64,000 nt of DNA from Rebecca billardiae RCC1528 (Eukaryota; Protista; Haptophyta): the NCBI GenBank assembly GCA_965240325.2, contig OZ251242.1, forward strand, positions 1,054,001 to 1,118,000, read 5' to 3'. Below the pieces are notes generated by a model, which saw only the letters and a list, made by a program, of their open reading frames with translations, made no database searches and was not told where the DNA came from. Numbering within the stretch: the first letter of the stretch is position 1; every line of letters begins with the position of its first letter. Shown one piece after another: positions 11,941 to 32,029 of this stretch. Both the position numbers and the translations under genes were made by a program.

Positions 11941-13564
11941 GCTAGTAGCTATATATAGTATATCTGCTGTATTCTGTATGCGCGCGTCGTTATAGTAGTC
12001 GTATAGCAGTATCCGCGGTAGTCACTCACCGTAGTCAGTACGCGTAGTGTCATGCACGCGGCCCGGGGCCGGGATTCCTCGTGACCAGTTGGCGGAGTTG
12101 CTCACTTGCACGCGTGACAAGCGCCGAAAAAACGACACTTTGGCAGTGATAGTCACCGTCGCCGCCTCGGGCATGCCGCTGCCGCCGGCAGCAGCGGCAG
12201 CGGGAGCGTGGCAGCGGATCTACCACCTTCTGCGTTACACGCTGCGTCGTGCGCGCCAGGTGGCAGGTGTCCCCTGTCTGCCGCGCGGAAGGCAGCGGTC
12301 GGCGAGCGCAGAGGTGAGAAGGAAGGCGCGCACGCATCGTGAGAGCTTCAGCAGCTTGCCCACGCGCTTCACGTAGGCGGTGTTGTTGCGTGCGCACGCC
12401 TTCTGTACCCGTACACGCGATCGCAGCGTGAGCCACTCCAGCCTGCCTGCGCATCGCGGGCCGAGCCGCCGGCGCCTCGTCTCCTGAATCCTCGTTCACG
12501 AGGACAGTACGTGTATGTATCCGTGGCGCGCTCGCTGCCGATGGCGGCTCCCCGTGTCGAGGGCGTTTGGCTGGAGCCGCATCCAGGGCATATATCGTCA
12601 CGGTCCCACCCGATGCTGACGCTGAGGTGGCGCGCTTGCCGAAGGCAGCAGCATTGGCTGATGCCTTCTGCATTGGCCACCTCTGCGCGACCGCGCGTTC
12701 ACGCTGCCGGCGCGCGGGCGGCGTCGCTTGGTGGGCACCTGCCTTGGGTTTTGTCGTTCGTTCTCAGCGACGGTTGGGTCGATTGACATGCCGATTGGAT
12801 TGGGGCATTGCGAATCGGCTTCGCAATGCCCCATTCCGCTCGGATCGGCGCGGGCGTCAGCCATGCGGCAGCGCGAGTGACAAAACCGACATTTCATACG
12901 CATGTCGTTTTTTCATACGCTCACGGTTACTCCCCCGTGCAACGGGTCTCGTCCTTACGTCTTACGTCTTATACGACATCACGAGTCCTGACGTCCGTCA
13001 CGTCGTCGGATGCGGATGTCGGACACTACGTCCTGTCTCCTGAGGTCGGGTCCTGATCATTCACTGCTGATCTATTGTGCCATCATAGCGGCCACTAACA
13101 CTTGCGGCTTGAGTCCGCCCAGACCGGGCGGCAGGAATAATATATCGCGCCCGCATCGGACTACCGGGCCTCGGTCCGGGCCACGGCGGGCTCACGGCCA
13201 CGGGCCGCCACCGGGCCGCCCAGGCCCCGCGCCGTGCCACTGTCTGTGAGCGTGGCCTAACGCCGTGACTCGGCCGCTCCGATCCGGGACCGCGGACGCC
13301 GGACGTGAGTCGCGACTGATGATGCGTGACAGCCTCCCGTGAGACGGCGGCTTAGTCAAGTTCACTACTAGTGCTAAAAAGCTAACAGTACGGAATAAGA
13401 CCGGATGACGCGACGTACGGTTTTAAGACGTTAGCTACCGCCGGCGCCGGCTCGGCTATACTCGGATCTGCGCACTGCTGATGGCACCGCGCCGGTCATC
13501 AGCGGCAGACATCAGTAATCACAGCAGAAGCCGAGGTCTGTCTGACCGAGTGAAATGAGTCAGA

Positions 13565-13695
13565 GATATATTTTTTAAATAATAATATCTATATATATAT
13601 GTGTGTGTGTTATAATTTACTATATTATTAATTAAAATAATATATATATATAATTATAAATAATCTAAAGTGCGCGCTCTCTCTCTCTATATATC
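13565..13695. repeat. AT-rich microsatellite patch ((TA)n, (TG)n, (CT)n)
   Basis: Directly visible. Similar (TA)n at 22937-22961; G18 run at 27538-27555. Confidence 0.8.
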
Positions 13696-13853
13696 GTACG
13701 TAGTCAGCTGTTACTACCTGGCACTATGTTACAGCAGTAGCTATGACAGCAGTGCCAGTGGCACGGCATGTCGCCGACGCCTGTCGACCAGCAGCCGGCT
13801 TCGGGCTGTCGCCGAATCGAACTTCCGCGGGCGGAGCCTCAAAATCAGGAGGC

Positions 13854-20539: not shown

Positions 20540-20717
20540 CTCGCCAATCCGCATCATGAACGCAAACAAAGAGTAACGCGGTGCGGTCGGCAGACTCTCA
20601 CTCACGGCGCGGCGTCGGGCGTCGCCGGTTGCGCAGCTGCCGACATCATCGCTGTGATGAAGCGTGAGGCCGCGTTGTGACGCACGCATATCGCGAACTC
20701 CGCGTCCTCGCCACTTA

Positions 20718-22704
20718 TATGATTAAACTTTCTTCAGGAATGCGCACCAGAAAAAGCCTTAACAACCCGCGCGGCCCAAGATGGGGTCGGCGGCCACGAC
20801 GGCGGTTATGCGCCCTTGCGCGCCTTGGAGCGGCGCGTGCGCGCCAGGAAGTGGGCCAAACCATGCTCGCGACATGCTCGTTCGTCGACGCTGATTGTTG
20901 GCCGATTGCATGCCAGCCCACGCCGACGTCTGAGTGCGCCTCGCCGCGCACGGTACAGCTTGACGGTACACGGCACGATTCGGCCGCGAGCAGCCTCGTG
21001 CGCGCGACCGAGTCAGAGGTGGTCGTCGAGAGTAGCACGAGCGGCGGCGCACAAGCGGGCCTGGTCGTTGCCGAATATCTGACGCACCAATCGACCTCGC
21101 CCAGCGCCATCTGCTCGTTTGTGCACGTGTTGGAAAGGATGAGCAGCTGCGTGCAAGGCGCCAAGCGCGCAGATGAGGCGTGGGCGAGCGAAGGGGCGGC
21201 GAGGGCCGGCGCGTGCGCGCGCGTAAATTCGAGCCTCCCCATATGCATCGAAACACACCGCGCTCGCTCGTCGAGCTGCGCACGGGTATCGGTGCGCGCG
21301 CGCCAACGCGGCGCGCCGTGCTCGCGCCCGGCAGCTGCAAACCTGCTCGCGCGCGCACGCGTGCGTGATGGACCGAGGAGGTCGCGCGAGCATGCGCGAT
21401 GTGTCTGGATGGAGCGTGTAGGAGGTGTAGGCTGCGCTCCGCACGCGCTCCGCCACCGTGCACCGCGCTGCCCCCCGTCCACGCGATCGCCGCCGAGCCC
21501 AGATTCAAACGCGCGCGAGCGCTCGAGCGCACCTCCGAGCAGCAGACGCAGCTATCGTGACGAAGGCGTGGCGAGAGGCAGATGTGCATGGCAAGTATCG
21601 TCATGGTGGTGCCCATCACGCGCACACTCTCGCGCATGCTCGCTGCACCACCTCGTCGCGCCCACGTGCAGCGCGCGGGGCGCGCTTCGTGCCCGGAGCA
21701 GCTGCGGAGCGGCTGCCGCGCGCAGTGCGCGCGGCGAGTAGGGCTCAGCCAATGGTCCGAGGGCGAGCCGGCCGAGCGTCGTGCGTGACGCACACGGACC
21801 TGGTGCAACGCCGCGTACCACTCGCAGCCACCATCGCGCCCGTACCAGCGAGCTGTGGCCGCCGCCGACACCCCAAAGCAGCCCAGCCGTCAGCGCGCGA
21901 CAGCCGACGAGCGCGCGACGCGCGCGTGCACCACCGTGATGAGCACGGATGAGCGCGCGCGCCCGTGTCGTAGCTCAGGCGGGGTCCCCCGATCGCACGC
22001 ACCACCGCGCTGCCACGCCTTCGACCATCTTGTGTCACCACGCGGGCACACGCCGGGCAGGCGGCGGGGCAGCCCGCTCGGCAAACGGTCAGCGCGCAGC
22101 GAGGATGGAGTCCGGCGAGGGGCGACCGGAGTGTCCGGCGCGACGGAGGTGGTCCACGCCGTGGTCGCCGACGCGTTCCTCACCACCTCCGAGGCCGTGG
22201 TGGCCGCCCGGGAGAAGGAATGCTCCCAGTCGCACCCTTTGCAGTGCTCCTTTGCGCGTGCACGCAACGGCGAGGAGCGGAAGCGTTAGAGGGCACTTTT
22301 TGTGCAGTTCAGGCGTTCTTTCCCCAAAATGTAGAATGCGCGGAGAAGTGCCCTCTAACGATTTTTGTGTGCAGCCGTGCCGCGCGCGCGAGGAAGGCCA
22401 CATGCGGCTCCTTGCACATCTGCTGCAGATCGGCTCGTGCTCGGCGAGCGCGGCGAGGAGGAAGGTGCGCGCTCGCGAGCTGGCGCACCTGAGAGTGATA
22501 TCGGCATCCGATCAGGAAGAGCGGGTCGATCTGCCCGCAGCTCGTCGCACGATCGCGAGAGCGCACGTGCGGTCGACGAGGAAGAAGGCCCGCATCGTGG
22601 CGTTTCCGCCAGTGGCGGGCCGGCTCGAGATTTGACGGCGAAACTCCAGCGGGTTGTTAATAAGGCTTTTTCTGGTGCGCATTCCTGAAGAAAGTTTAAT
22701 CATA
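20718..22704. mobile_element. Non-autonomous terminal-inverted-repeat DNA transposon (~2 kb)
   Basis: TIR TATGATTAAACTTTCTTCAGGAATGCGCACCAGAAAAAGCCTTAACAACCCGC (20718-20770) and its reverse complement (22649-22704, one 3-nt indel). Flanked by TTA on both sides (20715-17, 22705-07); a TA TSD reading is also possible. No recognisable transposase. Confidence 0.8.
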
Positions 22705-22936
22705 TTAGCGCGAAATGGCTGCCGTGCGACTGCCGCGCGTGTCAGCCCAGTACGACTGGACTGGCCGATTTCGTCGATCGGCGAAGTATTAGCAGTACTA
22801 CATATATCTCACTCACTCAGTCCGGCCAGTGTCGCGTCGTCTACAGTTTACGCTAAGAATAAGAGCAGACGCACACTGAGGCTCAGGCAGGCGAGACGCG
22901 ATAATAATGCGCGTATGTAGCCTAATACCGGTAATA

Positions 22937-24876: not shown

Positions 24877-27096
24877 ATGGCGTCGCCGCCGTCCGCGTGC
24901 GTGCGCACGACATTGGTCCTCCTAGCCGCGCTCGGCGTTGCGGGCTCGGCGAGCGACCAGGGCGCGTCCAGGGCTCCATCGGGCGCAGATGGCGCGCAGC
25001 GCGTGCCCGCGCCCATCGCAGACCTGCGCGACACGCAGGAGACCTTCCTCGCGCCCGACGCGGTTGGCATGCCTGCGGCCGCGCCCGACGACGCAAAGGG
25101 CCACGTGTTCGTGCTGAACACGGACATCCGGCTGCTCGCGTGCGACATGTGGCTCCTTCCCGTATCCCGCTCGATGGCCGTCGACGGCGCGTGGAATCTG
25201 CCCGCGTGCGAGCGCCCGCCCCGACCGCACGGCTTTGGCAAGTCGGCGCGGATCGCGCCGTGCCGTCCGAAGAGCGACGAGGGCGTGCGCCGCCGCAGCG
25301 CCGAGCGGTACCGCACGTACGCGCACCCGCTGCCGGTGCTCGCGCACGTGCTCTCTGAGCGCGGCGCGCCCTTGCTCTCCGTCGCCGAGCTCATGAGCAC
25401 GCTGCGCGAGTTCCTCGCGCACGCGGCGAGCCACGCGCATGAGTCCAAGTTTGGGCGCGCGCTGCCGCTGATCGCGCTGCCCATCTTCGGCTCGGGGCTC
25501 GCGTCGGAGGACGAGGAGAAGGGCGACCCGCACACGGGCTCGCTGATCGCGCTGATGCTCGACGAGCTCTCCGACTTTGTACAGGCGCACCCCATCGACG
25601 TCGCGCTGTGCACGCTCGACAACGCGGCCTTTGGCGCGGCGCTCAACGCGCGGCGCAAGCGCTCGCAGTCGTTTGGCGCGCGCTGCCCGCCGGACGCGCT
25701 GCAGAGGGACGAGTACCGGCGCGAGGTGCTGCGCCTCGCGGAGCTCTTCCTCGCCGGGCGCGTCTCGCTCTTCCTCGGCGCGGGCGTGAGCATCAACGCC
25801 GGACTGCCCGGCTGGTCTCGTCTGCTCGAGCAGCTCGCCCTTGAGCTTGGGCTCGGCGACGGCGACGGCGCGCAGCTGCGCACGCTGCGCGGGCTTGACC
25901 CTCTCGAGGCCGCGTCGGTGCTCGCGTTCAGGGCGGGCGGCGGGATGGAGCTCAAGCGGCTGGTCGCGCGGATCATCGGCAGCGCGAAGCGGCACTCGCT
26001 GCAGCACGCGCTGCTCGCCGGGCTCCCCTTCAGGGGTTGCATCACCACTAACTACGACGAGCTGTTCGAGCGCGCCATCCGGTGCACCGGCGGCGACATT
26101 GCCGTGCTGCCGGTCGAGATGGGCGCAGTGCGTGGGGCGTGGTGCCTCAAGATGCACGGCTCGGTGAGCGAGCCGCAGTCGATCGTGCTCACGCGCGCGG
26201 ACTACTCGCAGTTCTCGCGCGAGCAGGCCGCTTGCGAGGGCGTGCTGCAGGGCCTGCTGCTCACGCAGCACGTCCTCTTTGTCGGCTTTGGCATGCGCGA
26301 CGAAAACTGGTGTCGGATCTCGTCCGCAGTCAAGGCCTCGTTCAGGCCGCTCGACGTGCTCGGCGCCGGCGCCGGTGGCGCTGGTGGCGGCGGAGGCGGA
26401 GGAGGCCCGCGTGGTGCGGCACCACCAACGTCGCCGCCGGCGTGGCTCCCGCGGCCGCGGCACGGCACTGAGCCCACGGCCGACCGCCGGCACCCGGCGT
26501 GGTCGCAGCGGCCGCTCGCGCGCGAGCTCGACGCGGCGCCCGCGGCCGGCGGCGTGCCGGCGGCGGAGGACGAGGAGGGCCACACCGCCGCGATGCTGGG
26601 CACGGTGCTCTCGCTGCTGCATGACGACGCGCTCGACACGCTGTACCAGGAGCACATGCACGTGACCGCACTCGACCTGCTCGCGCCGCCCGCGCCGGCC
26701 AAGCTGGCGGACGTCGACCCGTTCGCGTGGCACGCGAGATCGCTCGAGATCTTCCTCGATCACGTGGTGAGCGCGGTCGAGTCGCGCACGTGCCGCATCC
26801 TCCTCAACAACAAGTTCTCCGCGCTGCTCTCGCCGAACACGCGCGCGCTGCGCGCGTGCGTCGAGGCGTTCCTCGAGACGCTGCCCGACGACGCCAAGAA
26901 GAGCGGCGCGTTCCAGCCCATCCTCACCACGCTGCTGTGGATGGGCCTCCGGACGGAGGCGGCGCGCGCGCTGATCTCAGACGACTCGTTCGAGGGGCCC
27001 TACTACCGCCGGTTGAGCCGGCTGGCTGACTCGCTGCCGCGGCACGTGAGCGCGTATCGAGAGGCAATGCATCGGCACCACCACCATCGGCAGTGA
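24877..27096 (+). CDS. Signal peptide + Macro-like domain + SIR2_2 (bacterial-type sirtuin/NADase) protein
   Basis: Hydrophobic N-terminus TTLVLLAALGVAGSA. Macro-like GHVFVLNTDIRLLACDMWLLP..IALPIFGSG. SIR2_2 motifs LFLGAGVSINAGLPGW, ITTNYDELFE, LKMHGS, IVLTRADY, LFVGFGMRDENW. Intronless. Confidence 0.82.
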   Translation: MASPPSACVRTTLVLLAALGVAGSASDQGASRAPSGADGAQRVPAPIADLRDTQETFLAPDAVGMPAAAPDDAKGHVFVLNTDIRLLACDMWLLPVSRSMAVDGAWNLPACERPPRPHGFGKSARIAPCRPKSDEGVRRRSAERYRTYAHPLPVLAHVLSERGAPLLSVAELMSTLREFLAHAASHAHESKFGRALPLIALPIFGSGLASEDEEKGDPHTGSLIALMLDELSDFVQAHPIDVALCTLDNAAFGAALNARRKRSQSFGARCPPDALQRDEYRREVLRLAELFLAGRVSLFLGAGVSINAGLPGWSRLLEQLALELGLGDGDGAQLRTLRGLDPLEAASVLAFRAGGGMELKRLVARIIGSAKRHSLQHALLAGLPFRGCITTNYDELFERAIRCTGGDIAVLPVEMGAVRGAWCLKMHGSVSEPQSIVLTRADYSQFSREQAACEGVLQGLLLTQHVLFVGFGMRDENWCRISSAVKASFRPLDVLGAGAGGAGGGGGGGGPRGAAPPTSPPAWLPRPRHGTEPTADRRHPAWSQRPLARELDAAPAAGGVPAAEDEEGHTAAMLGTVLSLLHDDALDTLYQEHMHVTALDLLAPPAPAKLADVDPFAWHARSLEIFLDHVVSAVESRTCRILLNNKFSALLSPNTRALRACVEAFLETLPDDAKKSGAFQPILTTLLWMGLRTEAARALISDDSFEGPYYRRLSRLADSLPRHVSAYREAMHRHHHHRQ

Positions 27097-27609
27097 TCGG
27101 CACCATCATCAACACTGAGGGACTATGGAGTAAGGTCACTGACGCCGTGATGAGGACCGCGCGCGGCGCGGCGTCGCCTGGGAAACCCAACTGTAAAGGC
27201 AGACCGTCAGAAGTCAGTTCGCGCGTCAACCCGAGCTCAATGATGCTGACGATGATGCGCAATCGAAATCCCCGGAATCGGCGCCGAGGCCACTTATAGT
27301 CTTAGTCATGATGACGACGTCGTGCGTCGTCATCGTGCAAAATCGTACGACTACTAATATACAGGCGGCGAGTACTATGTATATATATAGCGAGGAGCGC
27401 TGATCCTGGTGTTTGTCTCTGCTGCTCGATCTGCTGCTACAGCTTGCTGACTCTGACGCCTGCCCGTTGGCATACCACGTCGTTAATATATCGGCAAATG
27501 CGGCGCGAAGTGCACCGCCGCCAATTCTTTTGTAACAGGGGGGGGGGGGGGGGGGTCCAGATGGTGGGCCCCACTTTCACTTTGTCCGTTTGGCGGTGGC
27601 TGGCCAGGT

Positions 27610-28230
27610 AGTGCGGCACGTCCGTGCCGGGCCGTCTGCCGACGGGCCGCATTGAGCCGCGGTGGCGCCAGGTCGCCAAATCACGTGGTCGTGGTCCCAG
27701 ACAAGGTTGTTACTGCTAGTCCTGATCAGCTCGCTGGCCATGTCGGTCGATGATCACCTCGCCGTTGACAGGCGCGCACTCGCTACACACGTTTCGCACG
27801 GCACTACAGTGTGGCGGGCGGTGTCGGTCAGCGGTCACGCCGCACTGTACCGCGCAGTGCCAACATTGATCGTCAGACGGCACGGTGTGTGGGGTCAGAC
27901 AGAACATTGACTGGCCTGCACCGTCGCAAGGCATACCGAAGAGGTCAGCATGGCCGTCAGAAGGGTGATCCCGGTCCCTACTTGCCCATTCTTCCCATGC
28001 GAGCCTTACGGCTTACGCGCGCGCCGTCCGCACGAGGACGCGGACGTGGACGTGAGAGTGGTCGAAAAGTCGGAAAGGAAGCTGTCAGCATGCACACATG
28101 CTCGTACGGCGACGCCGACCGGCGTGTGGCATGCCCCCCGGTCCCGGACGTGCCACACGCGCCTTGGATGGTGGTGGGAGGGCATTCACGCCCGCCATGG
28201 CTTCCTTTCGAAGTGGGAAACTTCATCTTG
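27610..28230 (-). ncRNA. Candidate structured ncRNA, copy A (left arm of diverged inverted duplication)
   Basis: Homologous in reverse orientation to 28541-29145. Stems 28122-28131/28151-28160 and 27930-27939/27945-27955; the second gives G-U pairs on the minus strand. Indels break any shared reading frame. Family not recognised; ends approximate. Confidence 0.45.
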
Positions 28231-28540
28231 GACCCATAGTGCGAGTAGCCGCATAGTGCGGGGTGGGTTGTCACAGGTGTACAGGGTTAATACCGCTTGG
28301 ACGAATTTTACCTCGGATTCCTCGTAGGTGAACCCAATTACCTCCACCCTGCCTTCCCGCGCTTGGATTCATGTATTGACCTACTGGCACAGTTAAAAAC
28401 GTTTTTCGATTCCATCAAGTGTTCATCAATGACCGAGATGTGAACCTTCATCGAATAGCCCACAGTCCGGTGCAAATGGAAAGTTACCCCGAAGGCACGG
28501 AGTGTGAATAATAATCGAATCGCGGGGGGGGTTCCCACAG

Positions 28541-29145
28541 AAAGATGAAGTTTGAAGTTGGGCGGGATGATGCCTCGGGGGAAGCCGGAATGGCCGTCCC
28601 ACCGCGATCCAAGGCGTGAGTGCAACGTCCGGGATAGCGGTGGGGGCGGAGGGAGAGAGGGTGCACTCGCCGCGGTCGGCGTCGCCGTACGAGCGCGTGA
28701 GCGTGAGTGCCAGCTTCCTTGCGACTTCTCGACCACTCTCACGTCCAGGGTTAGGGAGGTTGCGCACGCGGGAAGGATGGGCAAGCCTGCCAAGTACTGA
28801 AGTAGCGGGCAGGCTCACCCTTCTGATGGCAGTGCTGACCTCTGGGGCATGCCAGGCGAGGGTGCAGACCTATCAAATGTTCTGTCTGACCCCGCAAGTC
28901 GTGAGTCTGACGATCAATGCTATTGGCTAGCTGCGCGGTAGTCGTGCGAGCGCCGTCCGACACCGGGCTGCCGCATGCGATTACGCGTGGAGTGTGCGCG
29001 CCTGTCAACGGCGGGGTGATCAACGACCGGCATGGCTAGCAAGCTGGCCAGGAATAGTAGCAGCCTTCTCTGGGACAGCGCCACGCGATTTGGCGACCTC
29101 GCCACGGCTTAATGCCCGTCCAGAGGCACGGACGTGCAGCACCGC
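28541..29145 (+). ncRNA. Candidate structured ncRNA, copy B (right arm of diverged inverted duplication)
   Basis: Stems 28616-28624/28662-28670, 28827-28836/28846-28854 and 28816-28821/28859-28864, the first two with U-G pairs on the plus strand. They are equivalent to the copy A stems despite sequence change. Confidence 0.45.
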
Positions 29146-32029
29146 CACTCTGCCACCACCGAAGTACCCGCCACCCGATCTGGCCGTACCGTACGGGTGG
29201 GTGGCGCGAAACAAGATCCCTGGCGAGCGCCACTGGGGACGCACGGCTTGGCGGCGCGTGGGTGCTCACTTCTCCGCCTCGGCTGGCAACACATACCAGT
29301 GTGGCTTCAGATGAAGTGTGGACCCGACTCGCGGGGGTCGTGCACGCGCGCTGCGGCTGGCCGGGCTCGAGCTGACTGCATCGAGGAGACGACGGAGGAG
29401 TGCCGAGACTGAGTGCGAAACTGCGAAAGGCACGAACCGACGAAGGGAGTACTGTAGCGTCACGCGCAAGCCCCAGTAGTTCTCCGCGTCGCTACCGCCC
29501 CGCTTGGCCCCATCGGAAGCATGCGTGCAGTGAGGGAGGCGACGGCAGCGTCAGTGATTGCCGCCTACAGGCTCCACCGCTCCGGCTCGCCAGCCGCTGG
29601 ATCCAGTGTCCGTGCGCGACGCTGCCATCCCTTAACGGACCGATCGACCACTCCACCTGGCAGCCTGGGCGGCTGGGGCGCAGGGCGCTGGGCCAGCCCT
29701 GCGCCGGCCTATAGGGCAGTTTACCTGACATGTCAGCCCTCTGCTGAGAATCAGCCGACACTGGTCAGCTGGTTGACAGATTGAGTCGGCTGACAGGCTG
29801 ATCACACTGTCAGCTGGCCGGCTGACACGTGTCAGACGAGCAGCCTGACACGGTGTCAGTGTGATCAGCCAGTCTGCTGAGTGCTGACCGCTACAGTACG
29901 CCTGTACGGTCGTTGGTCACTGACTCACTCACTGTCAGCAGGCCCATCTTGCGGATCATCTAGTGCCACACTGCTGAACTGCTGACACGTTAAGTGACGT
30001 GTCCGATCAGCCGGCTGTAAGCCGTCTGCTTCGGAAACGGAGCTGACAGTCACTCAGACAGCTGACAGGCAGCTGACAGACTCAGCCAGTCACTCGCGGC
30101 TGCGCGACTCGCGCCGCCATGGCCAAGCGACATAGGTCGGAGGCAGGCCCACTGCGAGGCTACTTGAGCCACTACTCAGACTAAGATGCGGCCGCCAGCC
30201 GCGGCCAGCGCCGCGATTCACCACTCACTACAGTATCAGTGCGCAGCTGAGCACCCTTCCTCCTCTGTGACGACAACTCACAACAGTGAACCAGCCGGCG
30301 CCCAACGGCCACTGCCACAGCCCACGGCGGCCCAAACAGGCCGACTGCGGCCGACGGTCGACGGAGGCGCCAGACTCACTTCATCTTCGTGTCAAACACG
30401 AACTCGTCAAGGCCTATTATTCGAGCTTTGTGCGGAGGGGCTTCGTGTCTTCTGCACGCCGCACCTGCCGCGAGTGACTACTGGCGAGTGTCAAAGTGCC
30501 ACCAAGCCACCAAGCGGTCCAAGCCTCTGAAGTGCTTTGCGTGAGCACCGACCAAGTTCCAGTCTTCCCGAGTCGCCGAGCCCCGGGCCCGGGCCTGCGC
30601 CTGCGGCCAGTGGAGACCCACGCTGCCGGGCCCAGGCGAGCGCCGAGCGGGCGCGAGCCTCGGTAGATCGGAGTTCCTGGGGGCCTGCCGGGCGCCGCCG
30701 GAAGGCGGGAAGGATCGAGAGCGGCTGACATCGCCAGTCGACCGGCCGGCCAGTCATCTGGTCGCTGGCAGTCAAGCCCACCACTCGGCTGACTGTGAGA
30801 CTGTAAGCCGAGCCGCCGACCACAGCTTGTCAGCTGGCTGACAGGCTGACACTGCTAGCTTGACGTTTGGCAACGGCGCGCGAGGCGCACGCGAGGCTCA
30901 TCCGAACGACTTCGTGGCTCGGCTTCGCGACGAGTTCGGACGGGGCACAGGCACCAGGGAGATCCATGTTATCAGCCGCGGCGAGGCTCGTCCGCGGGAG
31001 AACGTTGTCCTCGCGAGAACGATCCCGACAGCGGGAGCACATCGAGCGTTGGCCTGGCATCGGGGTTGCACATCAGTCCTGGTGCGACACTGCCTCTCGC
31101 CGCACCAGTGGGTCCTGCTCAGCTGCATTAGGGTCACTCACGCAGAACACGACGCGGCGGCAGGCCCAAGCGCGGAAAGGCTGACTTGATAGATCAATGA
31201 TACTGTCGAGGCCGCTCATGACCTATGCGTGTCTGCTCCGCTCAGCCGACCCGCAGTGGTGCCCGGGGCCGGCTGCGCGGCCAGCTGCTGGCGGCCCGTC
31301 CGGCCGCACAACCAGCCCTTCGTATGGAACGTACGCGTACGCGCCGTACCGAGCCCTGCAGGACCGTACGCGCACCCGTATGCGCAGGCCCACTCTGGCT
31401 GCCGGCCTTTGTGACTCAGTCCTGCCCCGCGCCCTGCGTGACTGCGTCCACCCAGCGATCACCAGGCCGTGCAGCTCTCAAGCGGCAGGGCGTCGTCCCG
31501 AGGGTTTACGGGTCCGGACGGACCGGACCGTGCCCGGTTTGGTCGTTTGGAGCACGGAGCACCGGCTGCACCACTACTTTCCGGGTCCGGAAACCTCGAG
31601 CTCGCCGCCGGACTGACTGAAGGTTACCTACCGTACGTCTGCACGGTCCAAGTGCGCACGTTATGAGCCTCGGACCGTCCCGGACTGAGCAGCTTCAAGA
31701 TCCGCGGATCACACCGTACTCTAGATACTACCAGCTAGATACTGCGCCCGGCTGGCGACTGGCGGCACGGGCGGGCTTTTAGAAAACTGTGTCAGATCTG
31801 AATTGCCGCATTCGGATGCTCGGCGGCCTCGGACCGACGGACCGTGCACCGTCGCCGTCGGAGGCCGCCGCCCGACGGTGGCCCGCGCGTCCGATGCCCG
31901 CGGCCGCCCGTCATGTATTACTCTCACCGACTCGGACCGCGAGACCGCGCGCTGGCCGTCAGGCCGCGCCATGCCCAAGCGGCACTCGGGAGCTCGATCG
32001 AAAGGCGCGAGGTGTATCGCCGGAAGTCG

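What the first reader, a model, noticed from the sequence alone, without database searches (positions are those of the whole stretch)
27610..29145. Pair of diverged, head-to-head, apparently structured ~600-nt non-coding RNAs sharing one central promoter-like spacer
Seen: two inverted homologous arms (~27610-28230 and ~28541-29145) with 18-21-nt identical blocks separated by substitutions and non-triplet indels, so they share no ORF. Each arm folds internally in the same places with different sequence. Stem A is GUGAGUGCA/UGCACUCGC (28616-24/28662-70) in the right arm and GCGUGUGGCA/UGCCACACGC (28160-51/28131-22) in the left, including an A-U to U-A compensatory swap. Stem B is UGGCA(G)UGCU/GGCAUGCCA in the right arm and GGC(C)AUGCUGA/UCGGUAUGCC in the left. 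The wobbles are G-U mainly when the right arm is read on + and the left on -, i.e. outward from the spacer. Copy-specific insertions are themselves hairpins (AGCCUGCC..GGCAGGCU in the right arm; CGUCCGC..GCGGACG in the left). CACUCUCACGUCC is conserved and appears loop-located. Both arms begin at AAGATGAAGTTT. I could not match RNase P/MRP, U3, SRP, snRNA or group I/II motifs. Inference: an undescribed large ncRNA family under structural selection, rather than a decaying foldback transposon.
Basis: partly seen in the sequence, partly recalled or inferred. Interest (0 to 1): 0.85.

Follow-up and report, generated by a model that had tools for sequence, protein, structure and literature searches.

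The report
Old inverted duplicate, RNA unproven
Two back-to-back, 84%-identical copies of a 620-base non-coding stretch are real in this haptophyte-type alga, but only one or two of their hairpins are better preserved than random decay would give, so a new large RNA family is possible but not shown.

Summary
The inverted pair is real: 27590-28229 (-) and 28542-29162 (+), 84% identical over 561 columns, 34 indels, non-coding, no Rfam match, no homologue in metagenome, viral, prokaryotic, phage or plasmid collections. What survives is local: stem A is kept through changes on both strands (p 0.005-0.035) and doubly changed helices are in excess on the outward strand (5 vs 1.6, p 0.01). No TSD or terminal repeat was found. 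New here: a telomeric 10-mer in the right arm only, which on the inward strand lies 5' of a possible pseudoknot, as a telomerase-RNA template would. Best reading: an old inverted duplicate, probably element-derived, with hairpins repaired by template switching (0.5); outward structured ncRNA pair 0.33; telomerase RNA plus pseudogene 0.1. The scan noted a 626-nt pseudoknotted element on another piece of this genome (s1-348492); kinship untested.

The parts
27590..28229 (-). Left arm (640 nt), non-coding, inverted paralogue of the right arm
28542..29162 (+). Right arm (621 nt)
28230..28541 (.). Spacer, 51% GC, no significant homology between its halves; each half folds slightly better read inward (z -1.5, -1.3 vs +0.6)
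28218..28229 (-). Inner 12-mer AAGATGAAGTTT, left copy: sharp inner boundary of homology
28542..28553 (+). Inner 12-mer, right copy
28616..28670 (+). Stem A, right arm (28616-24 with 28662-70, 9 bp, one U-G)
28122..28160 (-). Stem A, left arm (28160-51 with 28131-22, 10 bp Watson-Crick; one compensatory swap and one extra G-C pair relative to the right arm)
28597..28645 (+). Helix H1 of the right arm (28597-610 with 28632-45); crosses stem A, so an H-type pseudoknot can be drawn on either strand; a weaker version exists in the left arm
28544..28730 (+). Possible outward closing helix: 28544-52 with 28723-30 (left arm partner 28064-71), 8 bp with G-U pairs; AT-rich, chance not excluded
28734..28746 (+). 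Conserved 13-mer CACTCTCACGTCC (left copy 28048-28060, minus strand)
28747..28756 (+). Telomeric 10-mer AGGGTTAGGG, right arm only; template-like CCCUAACCCU on the minus strand; sole telomeric match of 9 nt or more in the window
28784..28815 (+). Right-arm-specific hairpin (8 bp)
28025..28046 (-). Left-arm-specific hairpin (7 bp), at the place where the right arm has the telomeric 10-mer
28827..28854 (+). Stem B, right arm (left copy 27930-27955, minus strand)
28884..28911 (+). Hairpin formed by two GTCTGAC copies, loop and bulge differ between arms, one A-U/G-U change (left copy 27872-27900)
28395..28406 (.). AAAAACGTTTTT palindrome in mid-spacer: a run of five T on both strands
27552..27572 (-). 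Small hairpin beyond the left arm, running into a G18 tract (27538-27555); possibly homologous to 29164-29189
29164..29189 (+). Small hairpin beyond the right arm; extension of homology past the arms is not statistically significant
29309..29317 (+). Third copy of AGATGAAGT
30378..30386 (-). Fourth copy of AGATGAAGT; with 29309 it forms a 10-bp inverted pair around 1.08 kb

Best explanation
An old local inverted duplicate of a 620-680-nt non-coding unit, most likely the end portion of a mobile or repeated element whose terminus is the AGATGAAGT motif, now 16% diverged. Shown: the duplication, its sharp inner and fuzzy outer ends, lack of coding signal, neutral-level conservation of the overall fold. 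Inferred: the copies arose by fold-back or template-switch duplication, or by two related element copies landing back to back; the few helices with matched changes (stem A) and the hairpin-shaped insertions come from short-range template switching during replication, which copies one arm of a palindrome onto the other at the DNA level; the telomeric 10-mer is a repair insert at a break in this inverted-repeat region. No dedicated RNA product is required; read-through transcription could at most give an imperfect 600-bp fold-back RNA.
For: Identity blocks at chance. Consensus energy, SCI and shared pairing probability equal neutral simulations. Number of shared helices not raised: 9 vs 8.7. No G-U strand bias. 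Folding z-scores weak and not outward. Transversions outnumber transitions 49:40, unlike stem-constrained RNA (own knowledge). Perfect hairpins as dense or denser in flanking intergenic DNA (3 vs 1.0, 5 vs 2.0, 20 vs 3.9 expected; arms 3 vs 1.5). Left stem A is fully Watson-Crick, as template switching would leave it; the mechanism is described in 10.1101/2021.04.15.439925. The end motif recurs twice more within 2.2 kb and nowhere else in the window. No Rfam match, no homologue elsewhere.
Against: No TSD and no conserved outer terminal repeat, so no element class is proven. No CpG transition excess (16/74 vs 14/73). Doubly changed helices are in excess on the outward strand only (5 vs 1.6, p 0.01; inward 3 vs 1.9; alifold 9 vs 4.3, p 0.02), which a strand-blind DNA process does not predict. 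The arms stayed collinear with no indel above 20 nt, while a second haplotype shows 8 indels (one of 94 nt) in 400 nt of flank and one SNP in 186 nt of arm (not significant, p 0.18-0.30).
Confidence: 0.5

Rival explanations
1. Two paralogous genes for a structured non-coding RNA of about 620-680 nt, read outward from the spacer. A 5' domain (about 190 nt) is closed by a helix with the 5' end and holds a pseudoknot or two-state switch (H1 versus stem A); an unpaired conserved 13-mer follows and could act as a guide or pair with the 3' GGACGUG; a second domain of short hairpins would be a protein scaffold. All steps inferred.
For: Stem A kept through a compensatory swap, a wobble and a matched 1-nt indel (p 0.005-0.035). 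Outward-only excess of doubly changed helices and of shared local pairs at variable columns (p 0.025). Several helices show A-U/G-U or G-C/G-U changes outward. The one haplotype SNP in the arm (27615) falls at a site that also differs between arms. An unchecked scan note describes a 626-nt two-domain pseudoknotted element elsewhere in the genome.
Against: Global fold conservation is at neutral level; many statistics were tried, and the significant ones rest on the same two or three helices. No G-U bias in the explicit test. No shared promoter motif, no T-run terminator at the outward ends. In the left arm the outward pseudoknot is sterically impossible as drawn (1-nt loop). Pseudoknot potential only in the top 3-8% of decoy windows, on both strands.
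Confidence: 0.33
2. The right arm, read inward (minus strand), is part of the telomerase RNA gene: template CCCUAACCCU, pseudoknot 75 nt downstream, core closed by an 8-bp helix (28774-67 with 28539-32), a folded 130-nt 3' domain in the spacer and a five-T terminator at 28399-95. The left arm is a truncated inverted duplicate that lost the template.
For: 10-mer expected by chance 0.001-0.003 times in the arms; predicted mostly unpaired. Closing helix is stronger on the minus strand (-11.6 vs -8.0 kcal/mol). Spacer half folds better on minus (z -1.25 vs +0.55) with a long G-U-containing hairpin. Order template, pseudoknot, closing helix, 3' stem matches PMC8287931; local TR duplications are known (PMC12133305).
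Against: No template-boundary hairpin directly 5' of the template, no TATA or identifiable USE upstream, stems and loop larger than described for related lineages; features were picked after the fact; pseudoknot score not exceptional; stem A is better in the template-less arm; the scan reports telomere-repeat inserts in this genome and another TR-like candidate (unchecked).
Confidence: 0.1
3. A hairpin-RNA locus: one transcript crosses both arms and the spacer, folds back into an imperfect 600-bp duplex and is diced into small RNAs.
For: The inverted geometry allows it; the upstream SIR2-domain gene points into the left arm.
Against: No target or third copy found; T-runs in the spacer; continuous duplex stretches are at most 22 bp; no RNA data.
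Confidence: 0.07

Closest known systems
Foldback / long-TIR non-autonomous DNA transposons (Mutator-like, FB)
   Same: Two long inverted arms around a short unrelated spacer, non-coding.
   Different: Homology is sharpest at the inner ends and fades outward; no terminal identity, no TSD; arms only 84% identical with 34 indels.
Telomerase RNA of Diaphoretickes (PMC8287931)
   Same: On the minus strand of the right arm: a 10-nt TTAGGG template, a downstream pseudoknot, a closing helix, a 3' stem and a T-run.
   Different: Template missing from the left arm; no boundary hairpin, no recognisable type 3 promoter; 400 nt of equally conserved sequence upstream; larger stems and loops.
RNase MRP / RNase P RNA
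   Same: A GGCUYAAU motif near the outward 3' end resembles CR-V followed by a possible closing strand (seen by eye; consensus from memory).
   Different: No GAAAGUC-type CR-I, no P4 pairing, no Rfam hit at E up to 10.
Template-switch-derived hairpins (10.1101/2021.04.15.439925)
   Same: Multi-base matched changes in a single stem and hairpin-shaped insertions.
   Different: That work deals with functional RNA genes; the mechanism alone does not explain an outward-strand excess.

Membership tests
Any Rfam 15 family | Covariance-model match at or near gathering score | tested here: not met
   only miRNA-hairpin matches at E above 1
TIR / foldback DNA transposon | Terminal inverted repeats with highest identity at the outer ends | tested here: not met
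TIR / foldback DNA transposon | Target-site duplication | tested here: not met
   only 2-bp chance repeats
TIR / foldback DNA transposon | Multiple dispersed copies in the genome | not testable with these tools
   no third copy in the window; genome cannot be searched; findings search by sequence blank and uninformative
Conserved structured ncRNA | Consensus fold conserved beyond neutral divergence | tested here: not met
Conserved structured ncRNA | Excess of compensatory changes | tested here: inconclusive
   p 0.005-0.08 outward, two sequences only, many statistics tried
Conserved structured ncRNA | Strand-specific G-U pattern | tested here: not met
   variable G-U 8 vs A-C 7; all G-U 26 vs 17 expected, p 0.07
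Conserved structured ncRNA | Discrete transcript | not testable with these tools
Telomerase RNA | Template of at least one repeat plus one base | tested here: met
   right arm minus strand only; telomere motif TTAGGG taken from own knowledge of haptophytes and an unchecked scan note
Telomerase RNA | Pseudoknot 3' of the template, core closed by a helix | tested here: inconclusive
   can be drawn, top 3-5% of decoys
Telomerase RNA | Template boundary hairpin directly 5' of the template | tested here: not met
   fold and inspection
Telomerase RNA | Type 3 promoter (USE, TATA) shared with the genome's snRNA genes | not testable with these tools
   no snRNA gene in the window; plant-type USE matches are common here (24 in 64 kb)
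RNase MRP / P RNA | CR-I and CR-V pairing into P4 | tested here: not met
   inspection alignment
Hammerhead-bearing elements (retrozymes, Penelope-like) | CUGANGA followed by stem II and GAAA | tested here: not met
   CUGACGA present in both arms, no GAAA after the next stem (alignment)
Duplicated protein-coding gene or relic | Shared reading frame | tested here: not met

The most novel reading that the evidence does not exclude
A new family of 620-680-nt, two-domain, pseudoknotted non-coding RNAs of haptophytes, present as an outward-facing paralogue pair here and perhaps as further dispersed copies; a narrower alternative is the first haptophyte telomerase RNA with an adjacent template-less duplicate.
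Probability: 0.33. Interest if true: 0.75.

Novelty: new member of a known kind. Interest (0 to 1): 0.38.

Why it matters
If it is only an old inverted duplicate it matters little, beyond showing that hairpin-rich intergenic DNA in this alga can mimic RNA covariation. If the arms are expressed RNAs, they would be a rare new large structured RNA in a eukaryotic lineage whose non-coding RNAs are barely catalogued. If the minus strand of the right arm is telomerase RNA, it would fill a gap: the two telomerase-RNA papers read here name no haptophyte TR.

Tried and rejected
Rfam at gathering and E up to 10: nothing. tRNA scan: nothing. Coding relic: rejected. Homologue hunts: metagenome patterns gave 0 and 13 hits, the 13 being chance matches without flanking similarity; viral 1 chance hit; prokaryotic genomes 9 chance hits; phages and plasmids none. 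Synteny through the SIR2-domain neighbour: relatives only 44-64% identical, not syntenic, no arm homologue. Extension of homology into the flanks: p 0.2-0.3. A third tandem copy at 29495-29745: top 2-5% of decoys by local alignment, absent from HMM and CM searches, stem A not kept; left open. SRP helix 8, U3/C-D boxes, hammerhead, HDV and MRP motifs considered by eye and rejected. Contigs over the right arm could not be fetched.

Full report
1. Observation. The two arms are real. Blastn aligns 27611-28187 to 28588-29142 in inverted orientation at E 4e-71, and a pairwise alignment extends this to 27590-28229 (-) versus 28542-29162 (+): 561 gap-free columns, 84% identical, 89 substitutions (40 transitions, 49 transversions) and 34 indels of 1-20 nt. 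Both arms start with the same 12-mer at the spacer side. There is no shared frame, none of the ORFs tested over the arms is in a 15-billion protein set, and Rfam gives nothing.

2. Setting. The window is 69% GC and gene-dense. The upstream SIR2-domain protein has its best named eukaryotic relative in Prymnesium parvum, in line with scan notes calling the host a haptophyte. Relatives are distant and not syntenic, and their loci hold no arm homologue. Pattern scans of metagenomes, viral contigs and prokaryotic genomes gave only chance matches; phage and plasmid collections gave none. So only two sequences are available, which caps what covariation can show.

3. Is the structure more than chance? 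I built a null by taking one arm and placing the observed substitutions and indels at random, then realigning. Against it, consensus energy and SCI (0.49-0.53) are ordinary on both strands, as is shared pairing probability and the count of shared helices (9 vs 8.7). The identical blocks are as long as 84% identity predicts. A strand-neutral tally finds 8 variable G-U against 7 variable A-C positions in shared helices. Single-arm folding is weak and, if anything, better inward. Perfect hairpins are enriched throughout the intergenic DNA of this window, in the flanks as much as in the arms, so hairpin-shaped insertions are not diagnostic.

4. What does survive. Stem A is kept in both arms through a U-A/A-U swap, a C-G/U-G change and a G-C pair gained on both strands; such a helix arose in 0.5-3.5% of simulations, depending on thresholds. 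Helices of 6 bp or more with changes on both strands number 5 outward against 1.6 expected (p 0.01), but 3 against 1.9 inward; alifold compensations are 9 vs 4.3 outward at span 200 (p 0.02) and 7 vs 4.1 at span 80 (p 0.08), against 5 vs 4.5 inward at span 80; the inward run at span 200 did not finish. These tests overlap, rest on two or three helices and were chosen among many, so I treat them as suggestive. Stem A crosses a second helix (H1), so an H-type pseudoknot can be drawn, on either strand, scoring in the top 3-8% of decoy windows. A second haplotype shows ten differences in 400 nt of flank and one in 186 nt of arm, a trend towards constraint that is not significant.

5. Element features. 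No TSD and no conserved outer terminus; no CpG decay. The inner boundary is sharp, and its core AGATGAAGT recurs at 29309 (+) and 30378 (-) and nowhere else in the window (5 matches at two mismatches against 0.47 expected). This clustering fits an element terminus or a repeated cis-motif better than a start site private to two RNAs. The spacer halves share no significant motif, so a common promoter is not shown.

6. The right arm holds AGGGTTAGGG at 28747-28756, the only telomeric match of 9 nt or more in the window, expected 0.001-0.003 times in the arms. Read on the minus strand it is a plausible template, 5' of the pseudoknot, inside a closing helix that is stronger on that strand, followed by a folded 130-nt domain and five T. 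That order is the one described for telomerase RNAs of related lineages (PMC8287931). Against it: no boundary hairpin, no promoter, oversize parts, no template in the left arm, and an unchecked scan note that telomere repeats are pasted into break sites in this genome. I give it 0.1.

7. Mechanism. Most likely (0.5): an old inverted duplicate, probably of an element end, in which short-range template switching, a DNA process able to create and repair stems with multi-base changes (10.1101/2021.04.15.439925), produced the matched changes and hairpin insertions, and a repair event added the telomeric 10-mer. The duplication and the neutral-level global fold are shown; the element origin, the template switching and the repair insert are inferred. 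Main rival (0.33): an outward-read structured RNA pair with selection confined to a few helices. Minor rivals: telomerase RNA plus pseudogene (0.1), hairpin-RNA locus (0.07).

8. Comparison and verdict. It fails the tested membership features of foldback transposons, RNase MRP/P, hammerhead elements and every Rfam family, and meets only the template criterion of telomerase RNA. On present evidence it is a new instance of a known kind of thing, a diverged inverted duplication, with an unresolved chance of being a new RNA. Interest 0.38: cheap, decisive tests exist (genome BLAST, stranded RNA-seq), and two of the open readings would be of real interest.

Noticed in passing
window 28220-30386: AGATGAAGT occurs four times here and nowhere else in the window; the copies at 29309 (+) and 30378 (-) form a 10-bp inverted pair around 1.08 kb with no clear TSD.
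   Followed up: partly
window 28747-28756: Only telomeric match of 9 nt or more in 64 kb, inside a copy-specific segment of the right arm.
   Followed up: yes
window 29495-29745: Weak collinear similarity to 28594-28830 including TCGACCACTC; borderline, possibly a much older tandem copy.
   Followed up: partly
window 29730-30100: Block rich in CTGACAG/CTGTCAG palindromes, ten perfect hairpins against 1.2 expected; looks like a subterminal-repeat element or satellite.
   Followed up: no
window 20714-20766 and 22656-22708: AT-rich 53-bp inverted repeat pair (94%) around 1.9 kb: probable TIR transposon.
   Followed up: no
window 27120-27495 vs L002: A second haplotype differs by 8 indels (one of 94 nt) and 2 SNPs in 400 nt of intergenic DNA while the SIR2-domain gene is identical; its contig ends inside the left arm at 27775.
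   Followed up: partly
window 24877-27096: SIR2_2-domain gene; best relatives are other haptophyte-like sequences (Prymnesium parvum 47%), then bacteria at 30-41%.
   Followed up: partly
window 12000-13800: Intergenic stretch with 20 perfect hairpins against 3.9 expected.
   Followed up: no
window 27538-27555: G18 tract preceded by TGTAACA at the outer end of the left arm.
   Followed up: no
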